Of a DNA stretch of 64,000 nt, positions 2,164 through 11,698 are shown piece by piece. How positions within the stretch are numbered: the stretch's first letter is position 1; the number at the start of each line of letters is the position of its first letter. A program made the translations under genes and the position numbers. The notes beneath the pieces are model-generated. The model had not been told where the DNA came from. It worked only from the letters and a program-made list of their open reading frames with translations, and ran no database searches. The stretch lies in sequence record NC_049851.1; one strand, given 5' to 3'.

Positions 2164-3630
2164 TTACAGCACGATCAGGTCAGTGTTGTGCGCGTAAGGC
2201 TGCGCAAACCGCTTTGCCAGTTCGGCCCCGGCTTCGGCCGCCGCACGCACCTCACTGAACGTCTGCTCGTTGAACAGCTTGCCGTCTTCGTAGACAGTGC
2301 GCAGGATGTTTTCCCGAGCCCCGAGTTCCGACGACTGAATGACTTCGAGGATGCCGCTCTCGTTGCGGACCACCGCGAGGTGCCCCTTGAGCGACTTCTT
2401 CGACGACGCAGTGATCGGGTCCTTCATAATCCCGGTCCATGCCTCGCGGCCATTCGTGACAGCACTTGCCTTCTGGGCGTGACCCAGTACATCCCGGTTG
2501 GTGGCTTGAAGCAGTGCGCCACCCATGCCGAATGCTACGTTCTCGGCACTGAACCCATGGAGTTCGAGGGCCCGCAGAATCGCGATGATCGAATCACGGT
2601 TCACACCGTCACCCTGAATCACACGCACGCTCGGATGGAGCACCTTGAAGCCCTTGCTGTTGGTCGTCGTCCCGAAGCTTGCGGCCAGCGACTTGACGCA
2701 GTACAGCACCACGGAAACCGGGTCTCCCGAGTCCGGGCGAATGACGACACGCCCACCCTTCGACAAGACCTTCTCCTTCAACTGCTTGCCCCAGATGTTG
2801 TCGACAGCATTGTAGATGTCGTATGCATCCGAGACGCAGGCATACACGCGCCCTTCCCCACCGAACTTGTCGATCATGTTCGAGTAGGCGTCGGCTTCGC
2901 GGTCGCGACCCCACGAAGTCACCGTGAAGTGCTCCATGGCCGGGATCGAGAAACCAGCGGCAGTTTCGTCGTAGTAACGACGAGCCGCCACCAGTGCCGG
3001 AACCGTATCGGTCCCGAGGAAGTTCACGAGGTGGGCCATGCCACCCAGTGCTGCCGTTTGCACCGACGATGCGCCACGTGCTCCGAAGTCGTGCAGCATA
3101 AACTTAACTGCGGACTCAGGATCGTCACACGTGCGGTTGAGAAACGCGCGCAGGTCCTGCTTGATGTGCCACGAGAGCGTTGCGACAGCCGTTGCGTACC
3201 ATACAGCGCGCAACAGTCGCGTCTCCATGAACTGACCGAGTTCTGCGAGTCCCGGAGCCGTGTTCCGCACTTGGTAATACGGGACGTGGTTCGGGACGAG
3301 CGTACCCTCGGGCAGAGCCGAAATGCTCACGGGCGGAAGACCACCGTGCTCGTTGACGATACGCATGAACTGCTCGTACGGGAACGTTCCCGAGTGAGCC
3401 ATCGCGATATCACGAGCCTCTTCTACTTGTTCGCGCGTCAGCGGGTTTGCCACGATATTCCGCAACTCTGCCTGAAGGCCGAAGAAGATGGAAGCGCGGT
3501 ATTCCTTGTCCGACCGTGCCGAGCAGTACGACGATGCGAACTGGACTCCGGCCGGAAGCTGCTCCGAATGGCTCCATTTGTAGCTGTCGGTGTCGAGCGC
3601 GAACGAGATAGCGAGATTGGTATTTTCCAT
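2164..3630 (-). CDS. nadV: nicotinamide phosphoribosyltransferase (NAMPT)
   Basis: Motifs DTDSYKWSH, HDFGARG, SIPAMEH, VSDAYD, IRPDSGDP, VIQGDG, FGMGGALLQ; start set at ATG 3630 behind GGAG. Confidence 0.95.
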   Translation of the reverse strand: MENTNLAISFALDTDSYKWSHSEQLPAGVQFASSYCSARSDKEYRASIFFGLQAELRNIVANPLTREQVEEARDIAMAHSGTFPYEQFMRIVNEHGGLPPVSISALPEGTLVPNHVPYYQVRNTAPGLAELGQFMETRLLRAVWYATAVATLSWHIKQDLRAFLNRTCDDPESAVKFMLHDFGARGASSVQTAALGGMAHLVNFLGTDTVPALVAARRYYDETAAGFSIPAMEHFTVTSWGRDREADAYSNMIDKFGGEGRVYACVSDAYDIYNAVDNIWGKQLKEKVLSKGGRVVIRPDSGDPVSVVLYCVKSLAASFGTTTNSKGFKVLHPSVRVIQGDGVNRDSIIAILRALELHGFSAENVAFGMGGALLQATNRDVLGHAQKASAVTNGREAWTGIMKDPITASSKKSLKGHLAVVRNESGILEVIQSSELGARENILRTVYEDGKLFNEQTFSEVRAAAEAGAELAKRFAQPYAHNTDLIVL

Positions 3631-3707
3631 GATTTGCAACTCCTGTTGCTGAAAGGTTGAGAAACCGTGTGCTCTTGCTCACGGGTACTACGGCACTGCT
3701 CACGCGC

Positions 3708-4031
3708 TCACTCTTGGAGTCGCGCTTCTTCTGACGGCAGGCCAATGTCTTTTGCACCGGCCGCCGCCAACTCCTTGATCCTGTTGATCGTTGTTTCCTT
3801 CATGGAGACATACGAACGCCTTCCGTCTTCCGTGCGCACGGGCACCAGACGCGACTTCGGGAACTTGTTGATAGCGCAGTCCATCGCATCGTGGATGATA
3901 GGTGTCGGGGCCGTTCGGAGACCACGACATGCTGCCTGATCCTTCGGCATGAACTGCCACGCAGGCGGCCCATCGATGATTCGGATTTGAGCGTTGTCCG
4001 GAAATTCGAAAGTTGCCACGCACACCCCCAT
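3708..4031 (-). CDS. Bro-N-like DNA-binding protein
   Basis: FEF..QIRIIDG.P.WQF..KD.A...GL and V.T.DG.R...E pattern resemble the Bro-N domain; has its own promoter. Confidence 0.5.
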   Translation of the reverse strand: MGVCVATFEFPDNAQIRIIDGPPAWQFMPKDQAACRGLRTAPTPIIHDAMDCAINKFPKSRLVPVRTEDGRRSYVSMKETTINRIKELAAAGAKDIGLPSEEARLQE

Positions 4032-4049
4032 GAATTAAACAGTACAGCT

Positions 4050-4078
4050 ATTCTGCCAGACTTCGGTCGATCAGTCAA
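4050..4078 (-). promoter_or_regulatory. sigma70-type promoter
   Basis: TTGACT-17 bp-CAGAAT. Confidence 0.5.
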
Positions 4079-4081
4079 ACA

Positions 4082-5188
4082 TTAATCGACAGGGATGAGA
4101 TCGATCATCTTCTGGACGATGAAGAAGTGGTCGCTGTACATTTCCTTCGGGTCCAGCAGGCCGAGCGGCACCCACCGAACTTCCGCGAAGTCGTCGTCGG
4201 CCTTCACCTCGATCAGCTTCTCTGCGTCGTTCAGCAGGTACAGGTAGGCGTGCGTGACGATACGACCACGCGTCTCGCCACGGTTCGGGTCCGAGAACAC
4301 ATGCTTGAATCGGAAAGCCAGCTTCATCGTGTCACGGCTCACCCGAATGCACGTCTCTTCGACAGCTTCACGGCACGAAGTGTTGAAGATGGTTTCGCCT
4401 GCGTGGGCAAACCCACCCGGCAGCGCCCACAGGCCCTTGCCCGGATTGAACTTGCGTCGCCCCAGCAGAACGTGGCCACTCTGGATGATCACCGAGTCTG
4501 CCGTCGTCATGATCGGCGCGTAGCTCTTGCCCTTGCCATCGCGACCACGGTAGCCGTGCTCTTCCAGATACTCCTTCGAGAACTTGATCTCGGCGTTGAG
4601 CGCGTCGATCACGTCGAGGTGTGCCCAGCCCCAGTGTTTGAGATAGGATTTCACTTCCGGATGCACGAGTTCCGTGATATCCGTGATGCCCTGTTCCCAA
4701 CACTGACCGCCACCGAACAACAGGTTGCGGACCGTCGTTGCGTCCAGCACTTCTCCGTTGACATTGAAACTGTTGACGCAGCGCGAATCCCACTGCGGGA
4801 ACTTCTTCAGGTAGTAGGACGAGTCGTCCTTCGAGTGGCCGATCAATCGGACCTCGACCTCGTGACCGCCAGCCCGAATCATCTGCACGTAGCGGTCGAC
4901 CTCGCGATGCACGGCCGCCATCCACTTGAAGTCGTTCTCGTGGAGGAAGTCGTCCAGCGTTTCGAACGCGATCTTGCTCACATTCTCCTGCTCACCATAG
5001 ACGGCGCGAAGCATGTCGATCACTTCGCATGCGGTCCACGGATTCTTGACGGTGCGCGGACGGTTTGCCGAGCCCACCAGAACCAACGTCAGGTCCGAGA
5101 TCGCAAGACTCGTATCGATGATCTGCTGGTGGCCGAGGTGGAGAGGGCGAAAGCGGCCGATGAAGACCGAAAGTTTCTTGATGCTCAT
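4082..5188 (-). CDS. nadM: bifunctional NMN adenylyltransferase / ADP-ribose Nudix hydrolase (NadM-Nudix)
   Basis: FIGRFRPLHLGH (HxGH), GSAN, KNPWT; Nudix box GGFAHAGETIFNTSCREAVEET. Confidence 0.93.
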   Translation of the reverse strand: MSIKKLSVFIGRFRPLHLGHQQIIDTSLAISDLTLVLVGSANRPRTVKNPWTACEVIDMLRAVYGEQENVSKIAFETLDDFLHENDFKWMAAVHREVDRYVQMIRAGGHEVEVRLIGHSKDDSSYYLKKFPQWDSRCVNSFNVNGEVLDATTVRNLLFGGGQCWEQGITDITELVHPEVKSYLKHWGWAHLDVIDALNAEIKFSKEYLEEHGYRGRDGKGKSYAPIMTTADSVIIQSGHVLLGRRKFNPGKGLWALPGGFAHAGETIFNTSCREAVEETCIRVSRDTMKLAFRFKHVFSDPNRGETRGRIVTHAYLYLLNDAEKLIEVKADDDFAEVRWVPLGLLDPKEMYSDHFFIVQKMIDLIPVD

Positions 5189-5259
5189 GTGCAACTCCTG
5201 TTGCTAGTGGGTTAAAAGCGAGGCTCTTGCCTCACCTACTCTTTACTACGGGGCCCAGT

Positions 5260-5520
5260 TTAAACCGAAACCCCAAGAAGTTCAAGCTCACCTTTCGTGA
5301 TCTTGATCTTCAGTCGCGTAACCGCCAGTTCCTTCTGGGCACTACGGATGTCGTAGGCCGCGCGGTACGAGATTTGGGACGATTCGTTGAGAAGGTCGAC
5401 GAGCGCCGTGGTGTCGGCCTCAAGCCCGACCTCGATGATCGAGAGTTTGCGCAGGCGGCGCTTCAGGATCGCGATCTTGAATTTCTTGAACATATGAAAA
5501 AGCCCCTGTGGTTTAGACAA
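5260..5520 (-). CDS. hypothetical coiled-coil protein
   Basis: ORF downstream of promoter TTGACG-16-TAGAAT (5527-5554). Confidence 0.55.
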   Translation of the reverse strand: MSKPQGLFHMFKKFKIAILKRRLRKLSIIEVGLEADTTALVDLLNESSQISYRAAYDIRSAQKELAVTRLKIKITKGELELLGVSV

Positions 5521-5545
5521 GGGCTTATTCTACAGCAACAACGTT

Positions 5546-7444
5546 TTACGTCAAGTACTTCGTGGTGAATTGCGCCCACGTCATGGCTTTCGATCCAGCC
5601 TTCTCGATCTTGCCCACGAACTTCGCGCCTTCACGGTACAGCAGCACCGTCATCTTCGAGCCGTAGGGCACAACCGTGCCGCCCAGACTTTCGACTTTGG
5701 CCTCTTCGTCCTTTGAACGGTAGCTCGTCCATGCGACGTTGACGCCCGCCAACTTGGTGCCTGATGCCTGCTTCTTCTGCGGCAGATCGCCGTCGATCTT
5801 GATCATGCCTTTGAGCGGCCGATACCATTTGCGGAACTCATACACGCCCTTGACCAGAACTTCGATGGTGGCGTGTTTGAACCCACGAATCTTCCCGACC
5901 TCGTTCCAGATGCCGTGCCTGTCGAGGTTGCAAAGCGTTTTCATGCTCATGCCTGCCTCTTCAAGCTGTGCCAGTTTCCGGACACCCATACCGCCTTCGG
6001 TGAAGCAACCGCTTGCCACCATCAGGGACTTGAGCGAGACCGGAGCGCATAGCACACGCTTCAGTTCCCGCATCATCTTCGGCCACTGTGCCTTTCCGAA
6101 CTCGGCAATGCATCCAGCCTCGAACGCCGATGGCAGCGGCTGTGTCGCCACCTGCACCAACTTGTCGGTCGTCGTGATGCCCATATCGTACAGCTTGGCC
6201 AACGACTTCTCCGCGAACTGCTCGATGCCGAGCGTCGTGCAGAAGAAGTGCAGGCGACGCACGTCTGTCACCGTCGTGTCATTGTCGAGTGCATACACGA
6301 ACCGACCACGGAACTCATACGGGCCCGGGGGCGGCGTCCATGCCGCGCGCTTGACCGTCCCCACGATCTTCGGGATCACGTCGCCCGAGCGCAGAATCCG
6401 GACAAGCGCCCCCACACCGATACCCTTCTCCTTCATCCACGTTGCATTGTGGGCCGTTGCCTGCGTTACAGTCACACCGTCGATCTCAATAGGTTTGATC
6501 TTGATCTTCGGTTGCCAGCGGCCGAGGCGCGTCTTCTTCCACTGGATGGCAATCACCTCTACCACATCGGCGTTTGCTTCGTCATTGACCTTGAACGCGA
6601 ACATTCGCTTTGGCTTGTCCGCGCTATCGTAGTCCATCACGAAGTCCACGGGGCTCACAACAAACCCGTCCAGCCGGTATGGGCTCAGGTAGCGCGCCTT
6701 GTTAAGCTGCTCCGTCAGGTACGCAGCATCCAGCTTGTCCAGACGGCCATAGGTAACGACCTCGAACCCCCACGTGTCTGCGTTCTTGAGGCTGCGCAGC
6801 AACAGCGTTTCGTCCGCATTCGGGTATATGCCGAGCACGACCAGTGACACGTCCTTGAGAGCCCGTGACGACCACGACCGGTTGAACAGGCCGTTGACCA
6901 TAGCCCGTGCGTTCTCGAACCCGTTCTCACCTGCTGCCTGCTTGCTGTACTTCTTCTGGAACTTCTCGTCGGCCATCAGGGCTTCGAGGCGCAACACGGT
7001 CTGCGCCTTAGTCGGGATAGTGGCCGGGATACGCTTGTATTCCACCAGTTTCGGGATCAGGTACGACACGTCGCGCCCAACCTCACCGTCACCACGGGTG
7101 ATCAGCATTCTGGGCTTGCGGCCCTTATACACGAGTTGCAGGCTCGTGCCGTCCAGCTTAGACATCCCGAAGTACTTGGTGGTCGAGGGCTCGCGCTTTG
7201 CGAACTTGGGCACGTCTTCCGGATACGCCTTTTCCAAGCTTGGCATAAAGTGCACGAGTTCGACCGCTTCCTTCTCGTCCGCTATACGTACGCCAGTCTG
7301 GTCGAGTTCTTTCCAGTCCGGCGCACGTTTGCGAAGCTGGTCTTCGAGGTGATCGAATTCCGGATCGCTGATAATCTCCTTCTCTTCGTTGTAGTACGCC
7401 CACTTGGCGCGCACGTACAACTCCTTCATTTCAGAAAGCTTCAT
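5546..7444 (-). CDS. ligA: NAD-dependent DNA ligase
   Basis: YYN..EIISDPEFDHL, MPSLEK, KLDG adenylation motif, TRGDGEVG, RSGDVIPKI, C-terminal BRCT-like region; start at ATGA overlap 7441-7444. Confidence 0.93.
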   Translation of the reverse strand: MKLSEMKELYVRAKWAYYNEEKEIISDPEFDHLEDQLRKRAPDWKELDQTGVRIADEKEAVELVHFMPSLEKAYPEDVPKFAKREPSTTKYFGMSKLDGTSLQLVYKGRKPRMLITRGDGEVGRDVSYLIPKLVEYKRIPATIPTKAQTVLRLEALMADEKFQKKYSKQAAGENGFENARAMVNGLFNRSWSSRALKDVSLVVLGIYPNADETLLLRSLKNADTWGFEVVTYGRLDKLDAAYLTEQLNKARYLSPYRLDGFVVSPVDFVMDYDSADKPKRMFAFKVNDEANADVVEVIAIQWKKTRLGRWQPKIKIKPIEIDGVTVTQATAHNATWMKEKGIGVGALVRILRSGDVIPKIVGTVKRAAWTPPPGPYEFRGRFVYALDNDTTVTDVRRLHFFCTTLGIEQFAEKSLAKLYDMGITTTDKLVQVATQPLPSAFEAGCIAEFGKAQWPKMMRELKRVLCAPVSLKSLMVASGCFTEGGMGVRKLAQLEEAGMSMKTLCNLDRHGIWNEVGKIRGFKHATIEVLVKGVYEFRKWYRPLKGMIKIDGDLPQKKQASGTKLAGVNVAWTSYRSKDEEAKVESLGGTVVPYGSKMTVLLYREGAKFVGKIEKAGSKAMTWAQFTTKYLT

Positions 7445-7632
7445 TCCACAATCCCGTTGTCTTCGACATGCTTCACGAATTGCGTGATCTCGGTCCACGC
7501 GCGATCAAACTTCGGATCGCTGTTCCAGTAGGTGCCAAGCAACGCATCCATTTCGCCCTTGGCACGCGCCCACGCTTGTGCGCGCATCGTCTTGAGTAGT
7601 TGTTCGTTACAGATGGACAATCGTTTCTCCAT
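7441..7632 (-). CDS. hypothetical protein (63 aa)
   Basis: ORF translationally coupled to the ligase (ATGA overlap). Confidence 0.55.
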   Translation of the reverse strand: MEKRLSICNEQLLKTMRAQAWARAKGEMDALLGTYWNSDPKFDRAWTEITQFVKHVEDNGIVE

Positions 7633-7637
7633 AGTCA

Positions 7638-7663
7638 AAGGGCGGCTCCGAAGAACCGCCCTT
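7638..7663 (-). terminator. rho-independent terminator-like hairpin
   Basis: AAGGGCGG/CCGCCCTT stem just after the ACP-like gene. Confidence 0.55.
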
Positions 7664-7669
7664 GGGGGC

Positions 7670-7921
7670 TTACACCTCTGCGTGTTCCTCGATGTACTCC
7701 GCAAACTGCTGCGGCGTCTGGAGCGTCACGGTCTCGGTGTTGTACTGCTCTTCACCGAAGCTCATGCTGAACTCGTCTTCGAGGGCCATCAGAAAGTCGG
7801 TCAGGTCGAGATCGTCGAAATGGTTCAGAAGTTTTGTGCCCGGAACCACGATCACCGCGTCGTCGCGCAGCAGGTCTTGGGCTTCTTGCATTACGACCGT
7901 CAGAATCTGATGAAAATCCAC
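7670..7921 (-). CDS. acyl carrier protein-like protein lacking the phosphopantetheine-attachment serine
   Basis: 83 aa, acidic; FDDLDLTDFLMALEDEF matches ACP DSLDxxExxMALEEEF with S->D; GTG start behind AGGAA. Confidence 0.75.
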   Translation of the reverse strand: MDFHQILTVVMQEAQDLLRDDAVIVVPGTKLLNHFDDLDLTDFLMALEDEFSMSFGEEQYNTETVTLQTPQQFAEYIEEHAEV

Positions 7922-7956
7922 TTGCTTGTTTCCTTTGCTTCGGTTGATGGTTGGTG

Positions 7957-8417: not shown

Positions 8418-8822
8418 TTATGCGAGGGTCGCGATGTGGCCAGCGTGCTTATGGCGCGGCGTATTCACGCAGCCTTCAGCACGAATCCGGTTGGTCAGGT
8501 AGTCGTCGGCCAGCACATGCATGACGTGCGAGCACGTGACATAGGTGTGCGGGCTGTCGTACGACTTCTGTCGCGCGATCTCGGAGTCGAGACGGTCGCG
8601 TTCGACTGCGTAGGTCCAACCGTCCGGCCGCGCGAACCCGTCTTCGTGTTCCGTCCACTCGATGGCCAGAACCACGGTCCCGGTGATCGGGTGGCCGACC
8701 GCACACTCGGGGGCCGGTTGAATCTCCGACTTGATGCGGTCCGTTGCCGGGCTCACAATCTCGCGTTGATGACGACGGGCTGCTCGGTGAGCCTCTTCTT
8801 CGGCCATTGCAAAATTCATCAT
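8418..8822 (-). CDS. hypothetical protein
   Basis: 134-aa ORF coupled to the upstream gene. Confidence 0.6.
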   Translation of the reverse strand: MMNFAMAEEEAHRAARRHQREIVSPATDRIKSEIQPAPECAVGHPITGTVVLAIEWTEHEDGFARPDGWTYAVERDRLDSEIARQKSYDSPHTYVTCSHVMHVLADDYLTNRIRAEGCVNTPRHKHAGHIATLA

Positions 8823-9499
8823 CGTTTGTCCTCCAGATAGGTGATGGGGCTGTTGCTGTTTTTGAGTGCCGTAGCCAGTCCGAGGCGCGTCAAAGCTGCC
8901 TGAGCGTACGACGTGATTTCGGTCTTTGCCTTCGACAGCGTGTTCTCGATGTACTCACCGAATTGACGCAGCACGAAGTTCAGGTTCGACTTCACGTTCA
9001 TGCGAGCCGACTCGACGTGCCCCAGCAATTCGTCGCGCTGCTTGGAAGACAGCTTCGCTTCCCCCAGCTTCTCGGCCAGCACATCGAGCGCGTCCAACGC
9101 GTTCTGTGCGTACTTCCGTGTGTCAGCCCGGAACTTCGGTGCGACCTCAGCAATGTGCGGAATCTGCGGAATCGACTGCCCGTTGTAGCGGGTCAGCGTA
9201 CACGGAACGCCGCTGCCCAGACCCATACTCGACACCAGCGACGCGAACTGGGCTTCCGACATCACGACCTCGATCAACTGGCCCGTATGCGACTGCATGT
9301 GCTGGTCTTCAGCGTAGCGTCGATACTGTTTCGACATGTTGATCGTCAGCGAGATCGAGTGCTGGTGCTCGAAGTCCGAGCCGTACAAATACTGGGTGCC
9401 GGAGCGGCGCGTGATCGCGATCTGGGCAAACGCAGGATGCTCGTAGCGGATACGATCACCCTCGTTGAACTCCTTCACGTCTTCGAATTGCGTTGCCAT
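8819..9499 (-). CDS. hypothetical phage protein
   Basis: 226 aa, RBS GGAGG, promoter TTGACG-17-TAAAAT at 9527-9555. Confidence 0.7.
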   Translation of the reverse strand: MATQFEDVKEFNEGDRIRYEHPAFAQIAITRRSGTQYLYGSDFEHQHSISLTINMSKQYRRYAEDQHMQSHTGQLIEVVMSEAQFASLVSSMGLGSGVPCTLTRYNGQSIPQIPHIAEVAPKFRADTRKYAQNALDALDVLAEKLGEAKLSSKQRDELLGHVESARMNVKSNLNFVLRQFGEYIENTLSKAKTEITSYAQAALTRLGLATALKNSNSPITYLEDKR

Positions 9500-10780: not shown

Positions 10781-11698
10781 ATGGAGAAAGTTATGGGAAC
10801 GTCAAAATGGGACGCCGCTTCTATAGCGGCCGAAGCAAAGCACTACACACAACCGACAGAATTCCGTCGAGGGTCCCATGGCGCGTACGTAGCGGCTCAG
10901 CGCCTAGGGATACTGGACGAGGTGTGCAAACACATGACGTTCAGACGCAAGCTCACGAAGGAGCACGTACTGAATGTCGCGCGTTCATACAAAACCCGCG
11001 TGGACTTTGCGCGCGGTGCAGAATCGGAATACGGGACCGCTCGAAAGAACGGATACCTAGATGAAGCGTGTGCACACATGCAACGAAAACTCAAGTGGAC
11101 CGAATCCAGTGTAGCAGCAGAGGCCGCAAAGTACACGAAGCGCTATGACTTTGAACTCGGCAGTCCGAACGCCTACAGCGCAGCCAAACGACTTGGCATC
11201 TATGATCAAGTATGTAGCCATATGGAATACAGCAAGCGGCATAGACTGACGCTCACGGAGATTCGCAAAATAGCAAAAACGTACAAGACGCGCAAGGAAT
11301 TCCAGACCGGTGACACCAGCGCGTATAACTGCGCAATCCGCAACGAGTGGCTTGATTCCGTGTGCGCCCATATGGAACGCGGGGCTACCGGCTTCAACAA
11401 TGACAAGCCCGGCACACTATACCAGATACTTCTCACGACTCCTACGGGCACGCGTCTATGGAAGATAGGCATTACGAACGGTCCCGTCACCAAACGGCTT
11501 GCTTCAATGGGCGTTCCACGGAACGTACACGCCGAAGTTGTGTGCACCGTGCATTTCCAAAACGGCAAGGAAGCACGACAACTAGAAACAAAGCTGCACG
11601 CACGAGGAAAGCGTCGCGGAGTGCACTACCAAGGCGAGCCCATCCTACGCAGCGGCAACACAGAATTGTTCCTGAAGCCGCTGATTAAACTCACGTGA
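10781..11698 (+). mobile_element. free-standing GIY-YIG-like (T5orf172-type) homing endonuclease with four N-terminal repeats
   Basis: Four ~47-aa repeats (A..Y..R.EF..G...AY..A.R.G.LD.VC.HM) then GTLYQI..KIGITN..KRL..ELF; inverted relative to all neighbours. Confidence 0.65.

What the first reader, a model, noticed from the sequence alone, without database searches (positions are those of the whole stretch)
7670..7921. Acyl carrier protein mimic with the catalytic serine replaced by aspartate
Seen: ACP size, acidity and helix II signature (DDLDLTDFLMALEDEF, ..TPQQFAEYI), but DSL reads DDL. Known: that Ser is the only 4'-phosphopantetheine attachment site, so the protein cannot carry acyl groups. 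ACP also has non-metabolic partners such as SpoT and MukB. Inference: a non-modifiable decoy that occupies ACP-binding surfaces, for example blocking AcpS/Fab enzymes, SpoT-dependent (p)ppGpp signalling, or ACP-dependent toxins or defence proteins.
Basis: partly seen in the sequence, partly recalled or inferred. Interest (0 to 1): 0.7.

Follow-up and report, generated by a model that had tools for sequence, protein, structure and literature searches.

The report
Serine-less acyl carrier protein look-alike
A giant Burkholderia phage carries a small, conserved copy of the bacterial acyl carrier protein that has lost the serine holding its cofactor (an acidic residue replaces it), so it cannot carry fatty acids and probably works only by binding other proteins; what it binds is untested.

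Summary
Window 7670-7921 (minus strand) is an 83-aa gene of Burkholderia jumbo phage BcepSauron. The identical gene in BcepSaruman is already annotated "acyl carrier protein-like protein". Sequence similarity to ACP is weak (Pfam PP-binding 13.8 bits, below its cut-off). The fold is clearly ACP: two independent models give TM 0.7-0.8 to dozens of solved ACPs.

The cofactor-attachment serine is Asp37. This is not a sequencing error. The only orthologue, 52% identical and in a syntenic sister phage, has Glu there. The gene is under purifying selection, and its acidic docking helix is almost invariant. The phage has no phosphopantetheinyl transferase, ketosynthase or adenylating enzyme.

The "decoy of host ACP partners" part remains inference. 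A predicted complex with host AcpS gave only weak support (0.58 against a best control of 0.06) and may reflect memory of solved complexes.

The same Asp/Glu replacement occurs in other phage ACP-like proteins, including a second ACP-like protein of BcepSauron itself and two in Pseudomonas phage Lu11. This scan had already noted such cases in Lu11 and in Aeromonas RIIB proteins. I rate it a new variant of a known kind, of moderate interest.

The parts
7670..7921 (-). CDS for the 83-aa serine-less ACP-fold protein. It equals BcepSaruman_119, annotated 'acyl carrier protein-like protein'; the BcepSauron record calls it hypothetical.
   Evidence: ORF; annotation; fold; orthologue P0002.
7811..7813 (-). 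Codon GAT for Asp37, which occupies the position of the 4'-phosphopantetheine serine of ACP (DSLD reads DDLD).
   Evidence: Sequence; alignments; no variation at this codon in related contigs.
7769..7816 (-). Residues 36-51, DDLDLTDFLMALEDEF. This is helix II, the acidic recognition helix of ACPs. Twelve of its 16 residues are invariant between the two orthologues.
   Evidence: helix 37-51 in the AF2 model; these residues form the predicted interface with AcpS.
7931..7935 (-). Shine-Dalgarno-like AAGGA, 9 nt upstream of the GTG start.
   Evidence: Read directly from the sequence.
7639..7662 (-). A 10-bp (up to 13-bp) GC-rich hairpin with a UUCG loop, 8 nt after the stop codon and without a U-run. 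It may be a 3' end, a stabiliser or a weak terminator. The sister phage has a GGCGC/GCGCC hairpin followed by TTTTT at the same place.
   Evidence: MFE -23 kcal/mol, z -2.1; L002 10253-10282.

Best explanation
The gene encodes a diverged descendant of a fatty-acid-synthase-type acyl carrier protein. It has kept the four-helix fold and the acidic helix II/III docking face. It has permanently lost the serine that receives 4'-phosphopantetheine, so it cannot carry acyl groups.

Most likely it is a protein-binding module made during infection. It would occupy the ACP-docking site of one specific host protein that tolerates or prefers unmodified ACP, and so inhibit or redirect that protein. Candidates are holo-ACP synthase AcpS and the glycerol-3-phosphate acyltransferase step that apo-ACP is known to inhibit.

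The Asp/Glu at the former serine site keeps a negative charge where the phosphodiester of holo-ACP would sit, and it also suits the first turn of helix II.

Shown here: the fold, the loss of the serine, its conservation, and the absence of carrier-partner enzymes in the phage. Inferred: that the partner is a host ACP client, and which one.
For: - **Fold.** ESM Atlas model TM 0.77-0.80 to ACP clusters. AF2 pLDDT 85 with canonical helix positions. All 50 listed Foldseek PDB hits are carrier proteins, 48 of them ACPs and two DltC. All NCBIfam hits are AcpP-type models.
- **Serine loss is ancestral and kept.** Asp in BcepSauron and BcepSaruman, Glu in the syntenic sister phage. dN 0.41 and dS 1.08. 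The two SNPs seen in close variants are both synonymous.
- **Docking face is the conserved part.** D36, L38, D39, L40, D42, F43, M45, L47, E48, D49, E50, F51, F55, G56, E57 and E58 are invariant, while helix I is free to vary. Identity to a Burkholderiaceae AcpP is 44% over residues 36-80.
- **No carrier partners.** The complete phage genome has no PPTase (PF01648), ketosynthase (PF00109) or adenylating enzyme (PF00501).
- **Predicted complex with three copies of B. cenocepacia AcpS.** ipSAE 0.58 against a best control of 0.06. The interface uses residues 33-34, 37-38, 41-42, 45-46, 57 and 60-64. The tool's verdict was 'weak support'.
- **Aromatic content.** It is about twice that of Ser-bearing ACPs: 9.6-14% against 4.1 +/- 1.6% in 97 hits. 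This fits a filled core with no acyl cavity.
[quoted passage not shown] 1995).
- **Recurrence.** Asp/Glu at this site recurs in other phage ACP-like proteins. Asp and Glu are at least two mutational steps from any Ser codon.
Against: - No binding, expression or phenotype data exist.
- The complex score is in the range the tool itself calls more often wrong than right unless the guess was likely beforehand. It may only reflect likeness to solved ACP-AcpS complexes.
- Blocking AcpS would act slowly, because the existing holo-ACP persists.
- Some ACP partners need the modified serine (IscS: PMC13343975).
- Host ACP is extremely abundant, and both orthologues start with weak codons (GTG, TTG). General competition is implausible.
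- Asp and Glu at the first turn of a helix are also what simple helix stability would favour, so the acidic residue need not be a phosphate mimic.
- The family has a 2-residue deletion before the motif and a 4-residue insertion after helix III. These could retarget it to a non-ACP partner.
Confidence: 0.45

Rival explanations
1. It is an adaptor or subunit for phage-encoded proteins. In this reading the ACP fold is a docking handle inside a phage complex, much as ACP serves as a structural subunit of respiratory complex I or of EmbC and MmpL5, and it does not target host ACP clients.
For: - BcepSauron has at least two more proteins with degenerate carrier-like domains: a 273-aa protein with two PP-binding-like domains (30.4 bits) and a 617-aa protein with four or more repeats.
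- ACP-like domains in other phages are fused to extra domains: Lu11 gp353, Vibrio phage 277E43-1 P0098, and a BFVD hit to an Aeromonas 'lysis inhibitor'.
- Solved structures among the fold hits show ACP as a structural subunit.
- The position between the 150-aa gene and the ligase block is syntenic in both phages.
Against: - No partner was identified.
- The neighbouring genes have no recognisable family.
- No fusion links the neighbours to ACP-like domains elsewhere.
- In the known structural roles, ACP usually binds through its acyl-phosphopantetheine arm, which is absent here.
- The conserved face is the one that host enzymes recognise.
Confidence: 0.25
2. It is a generic polyanion: a DNA or nucleic-acid mimic, or an acidic virion-internal or ejected protein. 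The ACP ancestry would then be incidental.
For: - Net charge is -17 in 83 residues.
- Many small acidic phage proteins are DNA mimics (general knowledge).
- An ACP was detected in virions of Erwinia jumbo phages by mass spectrometry (PMC7760394).
Against: - Canonical ACPs are just as acidic, so the charge is inherited and not new.
- Conservation is concentrated on the specific helix II/III motif and not on charge alone.
- No known DNA mimic has this fold (my knowledge, not tested).
Confidence: 0.1
3. It is a decaying relic of a captured host acpP gene with no present function.
For: It scores below every curated ACP threshold, and its defining residue is lost.
Against: - It is retained in synteny across phages whose neighbouring proteins are only 33-87% identical.
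- dN/dS is about 0.38, and close variants differ only by synonymous changes.
- The reading frame, RBS and fold are intact.
Confidence: 0.05
4. It is still a carrier that uses non-canonical chemistry on Asp/Glu or on another residue.
For: Only the constancy of a carboxylate at the site across lineages, plus the NAD-salvage genes nearby.
Against: - No modifying enzyme was found.
- No precedent is known to me.
- The Vibrio phage homologue has Asn at the site.
Confidence: 0.03

Closest known systems
Bacterial type II FAS acyl carrier protein (AcpP; Pfam PF00550, TIGR00517)
   Same: - Size of about 80 aa, strong acidity and the four-helix topology.
- A helix II motif D-x-L-D...M-A-L-E-D-E-F.
- 44% identity to a Burkholderiaceae AcpP over the C-terminal 45 residues.
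   Different: - Ser is replaced by Asp at the attachment site.
- A 2-residue deletion before the motif and a 4-residue insertion after helix III.
- About twice the aromatic content.
- Scores below all curated cut-offs.
- It is encoded by a phage that has no FAS or PPTase genes.
Engineered obligate apo-ACPs (E. coli S36T/S36A, Synechococcus S39A)
   Same: They are non-modifiable ACPs with an intact docking helix. Over-expression is growth-inhibitory, which is attributed to inhibition of glycerol-3-phosphate acyltransferase (PMC4736557; S36T is non-functional in PMC3340395).
   Different: - Those are laboratory point mutants of the host protein.
- This is a natural, long-diverged phage gene with an acidic residue rather than a neutral one.
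- Its toxicity has not been tested.
Other phage ACP-like proteins with Asp/Glu/Asn at the serine site (Pseudomonas phage Lu11 gp353 and a second Lu11 ORF, BcepSauron 273-aa protein domain 1, metagenomic P0076 and P0098, Vibrio phage 277E43-1 P0098)
   Same: They share the ACP-type helix II with D-[D/E/N]-x-D, and most are in large phages. They also share raised aromatic content.
   Different: - Only 15-19% identical to the BcepSauron protein.
- Several carry extra N- or C-terminal domains.
- Their genomic neighbourhoods are different.
- Whether they share one origin is unresolved.
Canonical phage-encoded ACPs (PHROG 5934; e.g. Caulobacter phage CcrBL10 gp195c, Erythrobacter phage R6L ORF32)
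   Same: They are small stand-alone phage ACP homologues of unknown role (PMC5463345). PHROG 5934 is a weak hit (E 0.001).
   Different: They keep the DSLD serine and so could in principle be loaded by host AcpS.

Membership tests
Acyl carrier protein / PP-binding (PF00550, TIGR00517) | Four-helix carrier-protein fold | tested here: met
   ESM Atlas model TM 0.77-0.80. AF2 pLDDT 85. All 50 listed Foldseek PDB hits are carrier proteins, 48 of them ACPs and two DltC, at TM 0.6-0.8. Caveat: the AF2 alignment contained ACPs, but the Atlas model is alignment-free.
Acyl carrier protein / PP-binding (PF00550, TIGR00517) | Score above the curated family threshold | tested here: not met
   PF00550 scores 13.8 bits against a 20.8 cut-off. 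TIGR00517 scores 23.1 bits against 70.45.
Acyl carrier protein / PP-binding (PF00550, TIGR00517) | Conserved Ser of the DSL motif at the N-terminus of helix II (the 4'-phosphopantetheine attachment site) | tested here: not met
   The residue is Asp37 here and Glu in the orthologue.
Acyl carrier protein / PP-binding (PF00550, TIGR00517) | Acidic recognition helix II | tested here: met
   D36, D39, D42, E48, D49 and E50 are conserved.
Acyl carrier protein / PP-binding (PF00550, TIGR00517) | Actual phosphopantetheinylation and acyl carriage | not testable with these tools
   This needs mass spectrometry. It is precluded in principle by the missing Ser, and the phage has no PPTase.
Natural 'apo-ACP-like' inhibitor of host ACP clients (functional class, not a curated family) | Binds a host ACP-client protein through helix II | tested here: inconclusive
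   The predicted complex with AcpS scored 0.58 against a best control of 0.06. That mark was reached by 51 of 78 solved complexes and 2 of 108 mismatched pairs, but scores of 0.60 or under are weak.
Natural 'apo-ACP-like' inhibitor of host ACP clients (functional class, not a curated family) | Inhibits growth, lipid synthesis or AcpS when expressed | not testable with these tools
   This requires an experiment.
Phage serine-less ACP-like proteins (proposed grouping) | ACP-type helix II with Asp, Glu or Asn at the serine position, encoded by a phage | tested here: met
Phage serine-less ACP-like proteins (proposed grouping) | Common descent of the serine-less lineages | tested here: inconclusive
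   The free tree needs 4 changes. Holding all ten serine-less rows together is not rejected (AU p 0.92). The alignment has only 82 columns and the branches are long.

The most novel reading that the evidence does not exclude
Ser-to-Asp/Glu ACP look-alikes form a widespread, possibly single, phage family of 'pseudo-ACPs'. The carboxylate would mimic the phosphodiester of holo-ACP. Large phages of Burkholderia, Pseudomonas, Vibrio and Aeromonas would use them, stand-alone or fused to other proteins such as RIIB, to engage one common host hub that normally reads the state of ACP. That would make them a new class of host-takeover or counter-defence module.
Probability: 0.3. Interest if true: 0.75.

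Novelty: new variant of a known kind. Interest (0 to 1): 0.55.

Why it matters
ACP is among the most connected proteins in a bacterium. It serves fatty-acid, lipid A, quorum-signal, biotin and lipoate synthesis, and it also touches SpoT, MukB and IscS.

A natural, evolutionarily maintained ACP that cannot be loaded would be a ready-made probe for which of these contacts a phage finds worth hitting. It would also be a template for protein inhibitors of AcpS or lipid synthesis in Burkholderia.

The function of phage-encoded ACPs in general is still described as unclear (PMC5463345). The serine-less forms narrow the question to protein binding alone, and simple pull-down and toxicity assays can test that.

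Tried and rejected
- **Sequencing error or recent mutation.** Rejected. The codon is the same in BcepSaruman and in contigs of two further public runs (X1, X2), the orthologue has Glu, and GAT is at least two steps from any Ser codon.
- **Single-sequence AF2.** It gave a poor model (pLDDT 51). An alignment was needed.
- **Search for more relatives.** A full-library phmmer of 1.84 billion representatives found only the sister-phage orthologue and one tandem true ACP. Scans of viral and metagenome contigs returned only Ser-bearing ACPs.
- **Gene fusion or fission links.** I compared the 150-aa upstream neighbour with the extra domains of the Lu11 and Vibrio ACP-like proteins and found none. Lu11 gp353 shares no neighbourhood with this gene.
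- **Family searches on the neighbours.** The 150-, 63-, 134- and 133-aa neighbours gave nothing. The 226-aa neighbour matched only a PHROG of unknown function (phrog_6452) and two sub-threshold Pfam families. The 150- and 63-aa neighbours and the gene itself gave nothing in PADLOC.
- **Non-coding signals.** No Rfam family and no consensus promoter or terminator around the gene.
- **RNA evidence for expression.** No run of an infection was found. The one possible RNA run held nothing on this stretch.
- **Independent loss versus single origin of serine-less ACPs.** The tree cannot decide.
- **Predicted-complex references.** ACPS_BURCJ and ACPS_BURCA were not held, so ACPS_BURCH was used.
- **Literature.** Searches found no paper on serine-less phage ACPs.

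Full report
**What and where.** The window is part of Burkholderia cenocepacia jumbo phage BcepSauron. The window's genome is a 262,653-bp virus record, and the window corresponds to 62,001-126,000 of it. Best matches are BcepSauron and BcepSaruman, genus Sarumanvirus.

The finding's coordinates, 7670-7921 on the minus strand, are an 83-aa ORF. It has a GTG start and an AAGGA ribosome-binding site 9 nt upstream. In BcepSaruman the identical gene (252/252 nt) is annotated "acyl carrier protein-like protein". In the BcepSauron record it is "hypothetical protein". The gene lies in a long array of co-directional genes:
- Downstream are a 63-aa gene, an NAD-dependent DNA ligase, a bifunctional NMN adenylyltransferase/NUDIX protein and a NAMPT.
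- Upstream are unknown small genes and then an HNH, YqeY, RtcB and NUDIX block.

**Is it an ACP?** By sequence, only weakly.
- Pfam PP-binding gives E 0.071 and 13.8 bits against a 20.8 cut-off.
- TIGR00517 gives 23 bits against 70, although all seven NCBIfam hits are AcpP-type models.
- In phmmer against the PDB, all 60 listed hits are ACPs, but at E of 0.014 or worse.

By structure, clearly yes.
- The alignment-free ESM Atlas model (pLDDT 0.83) matches ACP clusters at TM 0.77-0.80.
- AlphaFold2 with a nine-sequence alignment gives pLDDT 85, with helices at 3-17, 37-51, 57-60 and 70-80.
- All 50 listed Foldseek PDB hits are carrier proteins, 48 of them ACPs and two DltC, at TM 0.6-0.8.
- Single-sequence AF2 failed.

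**The serine.** Every alignment places Asp37 (GAT, window 7811-7813) on the serine of the DSLD motif at the start of helix II. An exhaustive phmmer over 1.84 billion representatives found only two relatives.
- The first is P0002, 81 aa and 52% identical. It reads FDELDL, with Glu at the site.
- The second is a tandem true ACP with DSLD.

P0002 lies in the same gene order (NUDIX, RtcB, YqeY, HNH, then the 153-aa gene, the ACP-like gene, ligase, NMNAT and NAMPT) in a sister jumbo phage. The serine was therefore lost before the two phages diverged. Their neighbouring proteins are 33-87% identical.

Several results show the gene is maintained.
- dN is 0.41 and dS is 1.08.
- Two natural close variants differ only at synonymous third positions, K30 and T29, and have no change at codon 37.
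- The invariant residues cluster on helix II and the following loop and helix III: D36, L38, D39, L40, D42, F43, M45, L47, E48, D49, E50, F51, S52, F55, G56, E57, E58, Y60 and N61. Helix I varies freely.

The next-nearest sequences, from viral and metagenome contigs and Caulobacter phage CcrBL10, all keep DSLD.

**Can it be a carrier?** The complete phage genome has no match to PPTase (PF01648), ketoacyl synthase (PF00109) or AMP-binding enzymes (PF00501). The control genomes gave matches in each search. With no serine at the only position that PPTases modify, the protein cannot be a canonical carrier.

The serine-less proteins also have about twice the aromatic content of Ser-bearing ACPs. 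Values are 9.6% here, 11.1% in the orthologue and 14.3% in the Lu11 domain, against 4.1 +/- 1.6% in 97 Ser-bearing hits, only one of which reaches 9.6%. This fits a filled core rather than an acyl-chain cavity. I could not inspect side-chain burial in the model.

**How it most likely works.** What is conserved is precisely the surface through which ACP docks on its client enzymes. [quoted passage not shown] That is a direct precedent for a non-modifiable ACP acting as an inhibitor.

I tested one candidate target. A predicted complex with three copies of B. cenocepacia AcpS places helix II (residues 33-34, 37-38, 41-42, 45-46) and 57 and 60-64 in the canonical site between two AcpS protomers. 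The score was 0.58 against a best control of 0.06. That mark was reached by 51 of 78 solved complexes and 2 of 108 mismatches, but passes at 0.60 or under are rated weak, and memory of solved ACP-AcpS complexes may explain the result. It shows that the surface is still ACP-like, not that it binds.

Several points argue against a general decoy.
- At least IscS needs Ser36, since S36T abolishes binding (PMC13343975).
- Host ACP is very abundant (general knowledge; PMC3340395).
- Both orthologues use weak start codons, GTG and TTG.

I therefore favour a specific, high-affinity host target (confidence 0.45) over bulk competition. The main rival is an adaptor role within phage complexes (0.25).

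**The acidic replacement recurs.**
- Within BcepSauron, a 273-aa protein has two PP-binding-like domains (30.4 bits, above the cut-off). The first reads GLDEND, with Glu at the site. A 617-aa protein has four or more degenerate repeats.
Gp353 ends in an ACP domain reading GVDDLD (26.4 bits), and a second Lu11 ORF reads LADETD.
- A compost-metagenome fragment that closely resembles the C-terminal part of Lu11 gp353 has GVDELD. Asp and Glu therefore interchange within that group, as they do between BcepSauron and its sister phage.
- Two more metagenomic proteins read DDELD (P0076) and PDDLD (P0098). The latter lies in a phage-like array of small genes.
- Vibrio phage 277E43-1 has Asn (FDNLD) plus a 100-aa C-terminal extension.

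Of the six serine-less cases not found through words of the query, five are acidic. Asp and Glu need at least two nucleotide changes from any Ser codon, so mutation bias does not explain the pattern. Two explanations remain, and I cannot separate them:
- The carboxylate mimics the phosphodiester charge of holo-ACP.
- A carboxylate is simply favourable in the first turn of a helix.

Whether the serine-less lineages share one origin is also open. The free tree needs four changes, but a tree that holds all ten together is not rejected and even scores better (AU p 0.92). There are only 82 columns and the branches are long.

**Novelty.** The ACP-like nature of the gene is already in GenBank. I found no paper that notes serine-less phage ACPs or assigns them a function. 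Phage ACPs in general are called functionally unclear (PMC5463345). This scan has reported the same theme before on other DNA, in Lu11 and in Aeromonas RIIB N-termini. I rate it a new variant of a known kind, with interest 0.55.

Noticed in passing
G000:C1:221439-222338 (+), outside the window; locus L013 1189-2010: A 273-aa BcepSauron protein has two PP-binding-like domains (Pfam 30.4 bits, above the cut-off). The first reads GLDENDRQEL, with Glu at the serine site. The second reads INSAD, with the Ser kept but the preceding Asp lost.
   Followed up: partly
G000:C1:250642-252573 (-), outside the window; locus L016 1201-3054: A 617-aa BcepSauron protein is built from at least four degenerate carrier-protein-like repeats (for example ...GWGSVDMEMAWQELSGVFGIDIP...). 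It has no Pfam or PHROG family. It may represent an expansion of ACP-like modules in this phage.
   Followed up: partly
window 2164-7498 (-): An NAD block lies next to the finding. It contains NAMPT (2164-3639), a bifunctional cytidylyltransferase-like/NUDIX NMN adenylyltransferase (4082-5194) and an NAD-dependent DNA ligase (5546-7498). The first two look like a phage NAD+ salvage pair of the kind proposed to counter NAD-depleting defences (my knowledge; function not tested).
   Followed up: partly
window 7639-7662 (-), and L002 10253-10282: A strong UUCG-loop hairpin sits 8 nt after the stop codon of the ACP-like gene and has no U-tract. The sister phage has a short GC hairpin followed by TTTTT at the same place. 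The gene may therefore end a transcript or carry a stabilising 3' structure.
   Followed up: partly
Protein P0002 / locus L002 (sister phage; UniRef A0A8S5UIU0, 'Myoviridae sp. ctu2j3'): The sister phage's orthologue is on record in 848 contigs. These include short contigs in assemblies labelled Salmonella, Enterococcus, Staphylococcus, Listeria, Helicobacter, Vibrio and Pseudomonas. That pattern suggests a widespread laboratory or reagent contaminant rather than true hosts.
   Followed up: no
window 10781-11698 (+): This is the only gene on the opposite strand in this stretch. It encodes a 305-aa protein with four N-terminal repeats of about 45 aa and a C-terminal MUG113/T5orf172-type domain (Pfam 24.1 bits). 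It is probably a mobile nuclease-like insertion.
   Followed up: partly
Lu11 NC_017972 262440-262706 (gp354) and G000:C1:245152-245373 (-): The gene next to Lu11's serine-less ACP-like gp353 has a 53%-identical 45-residue match in BcepSauron. The match is not beside the window's ACP-like gene. It lies in the 219-252 kb region that holds the other ACP-like repeat proteins.
   Followed up: no
window 8819-9499 (-): A 226-aa neighbour belongs to PHROG 6452 (unknown function, E 7.5e-44). It has a sub-threshold Pfam match to Wadjet JetA (E 0.005, 15.9 bits against 26.2), which is probably coiled-coil noise.
   Followed up: no
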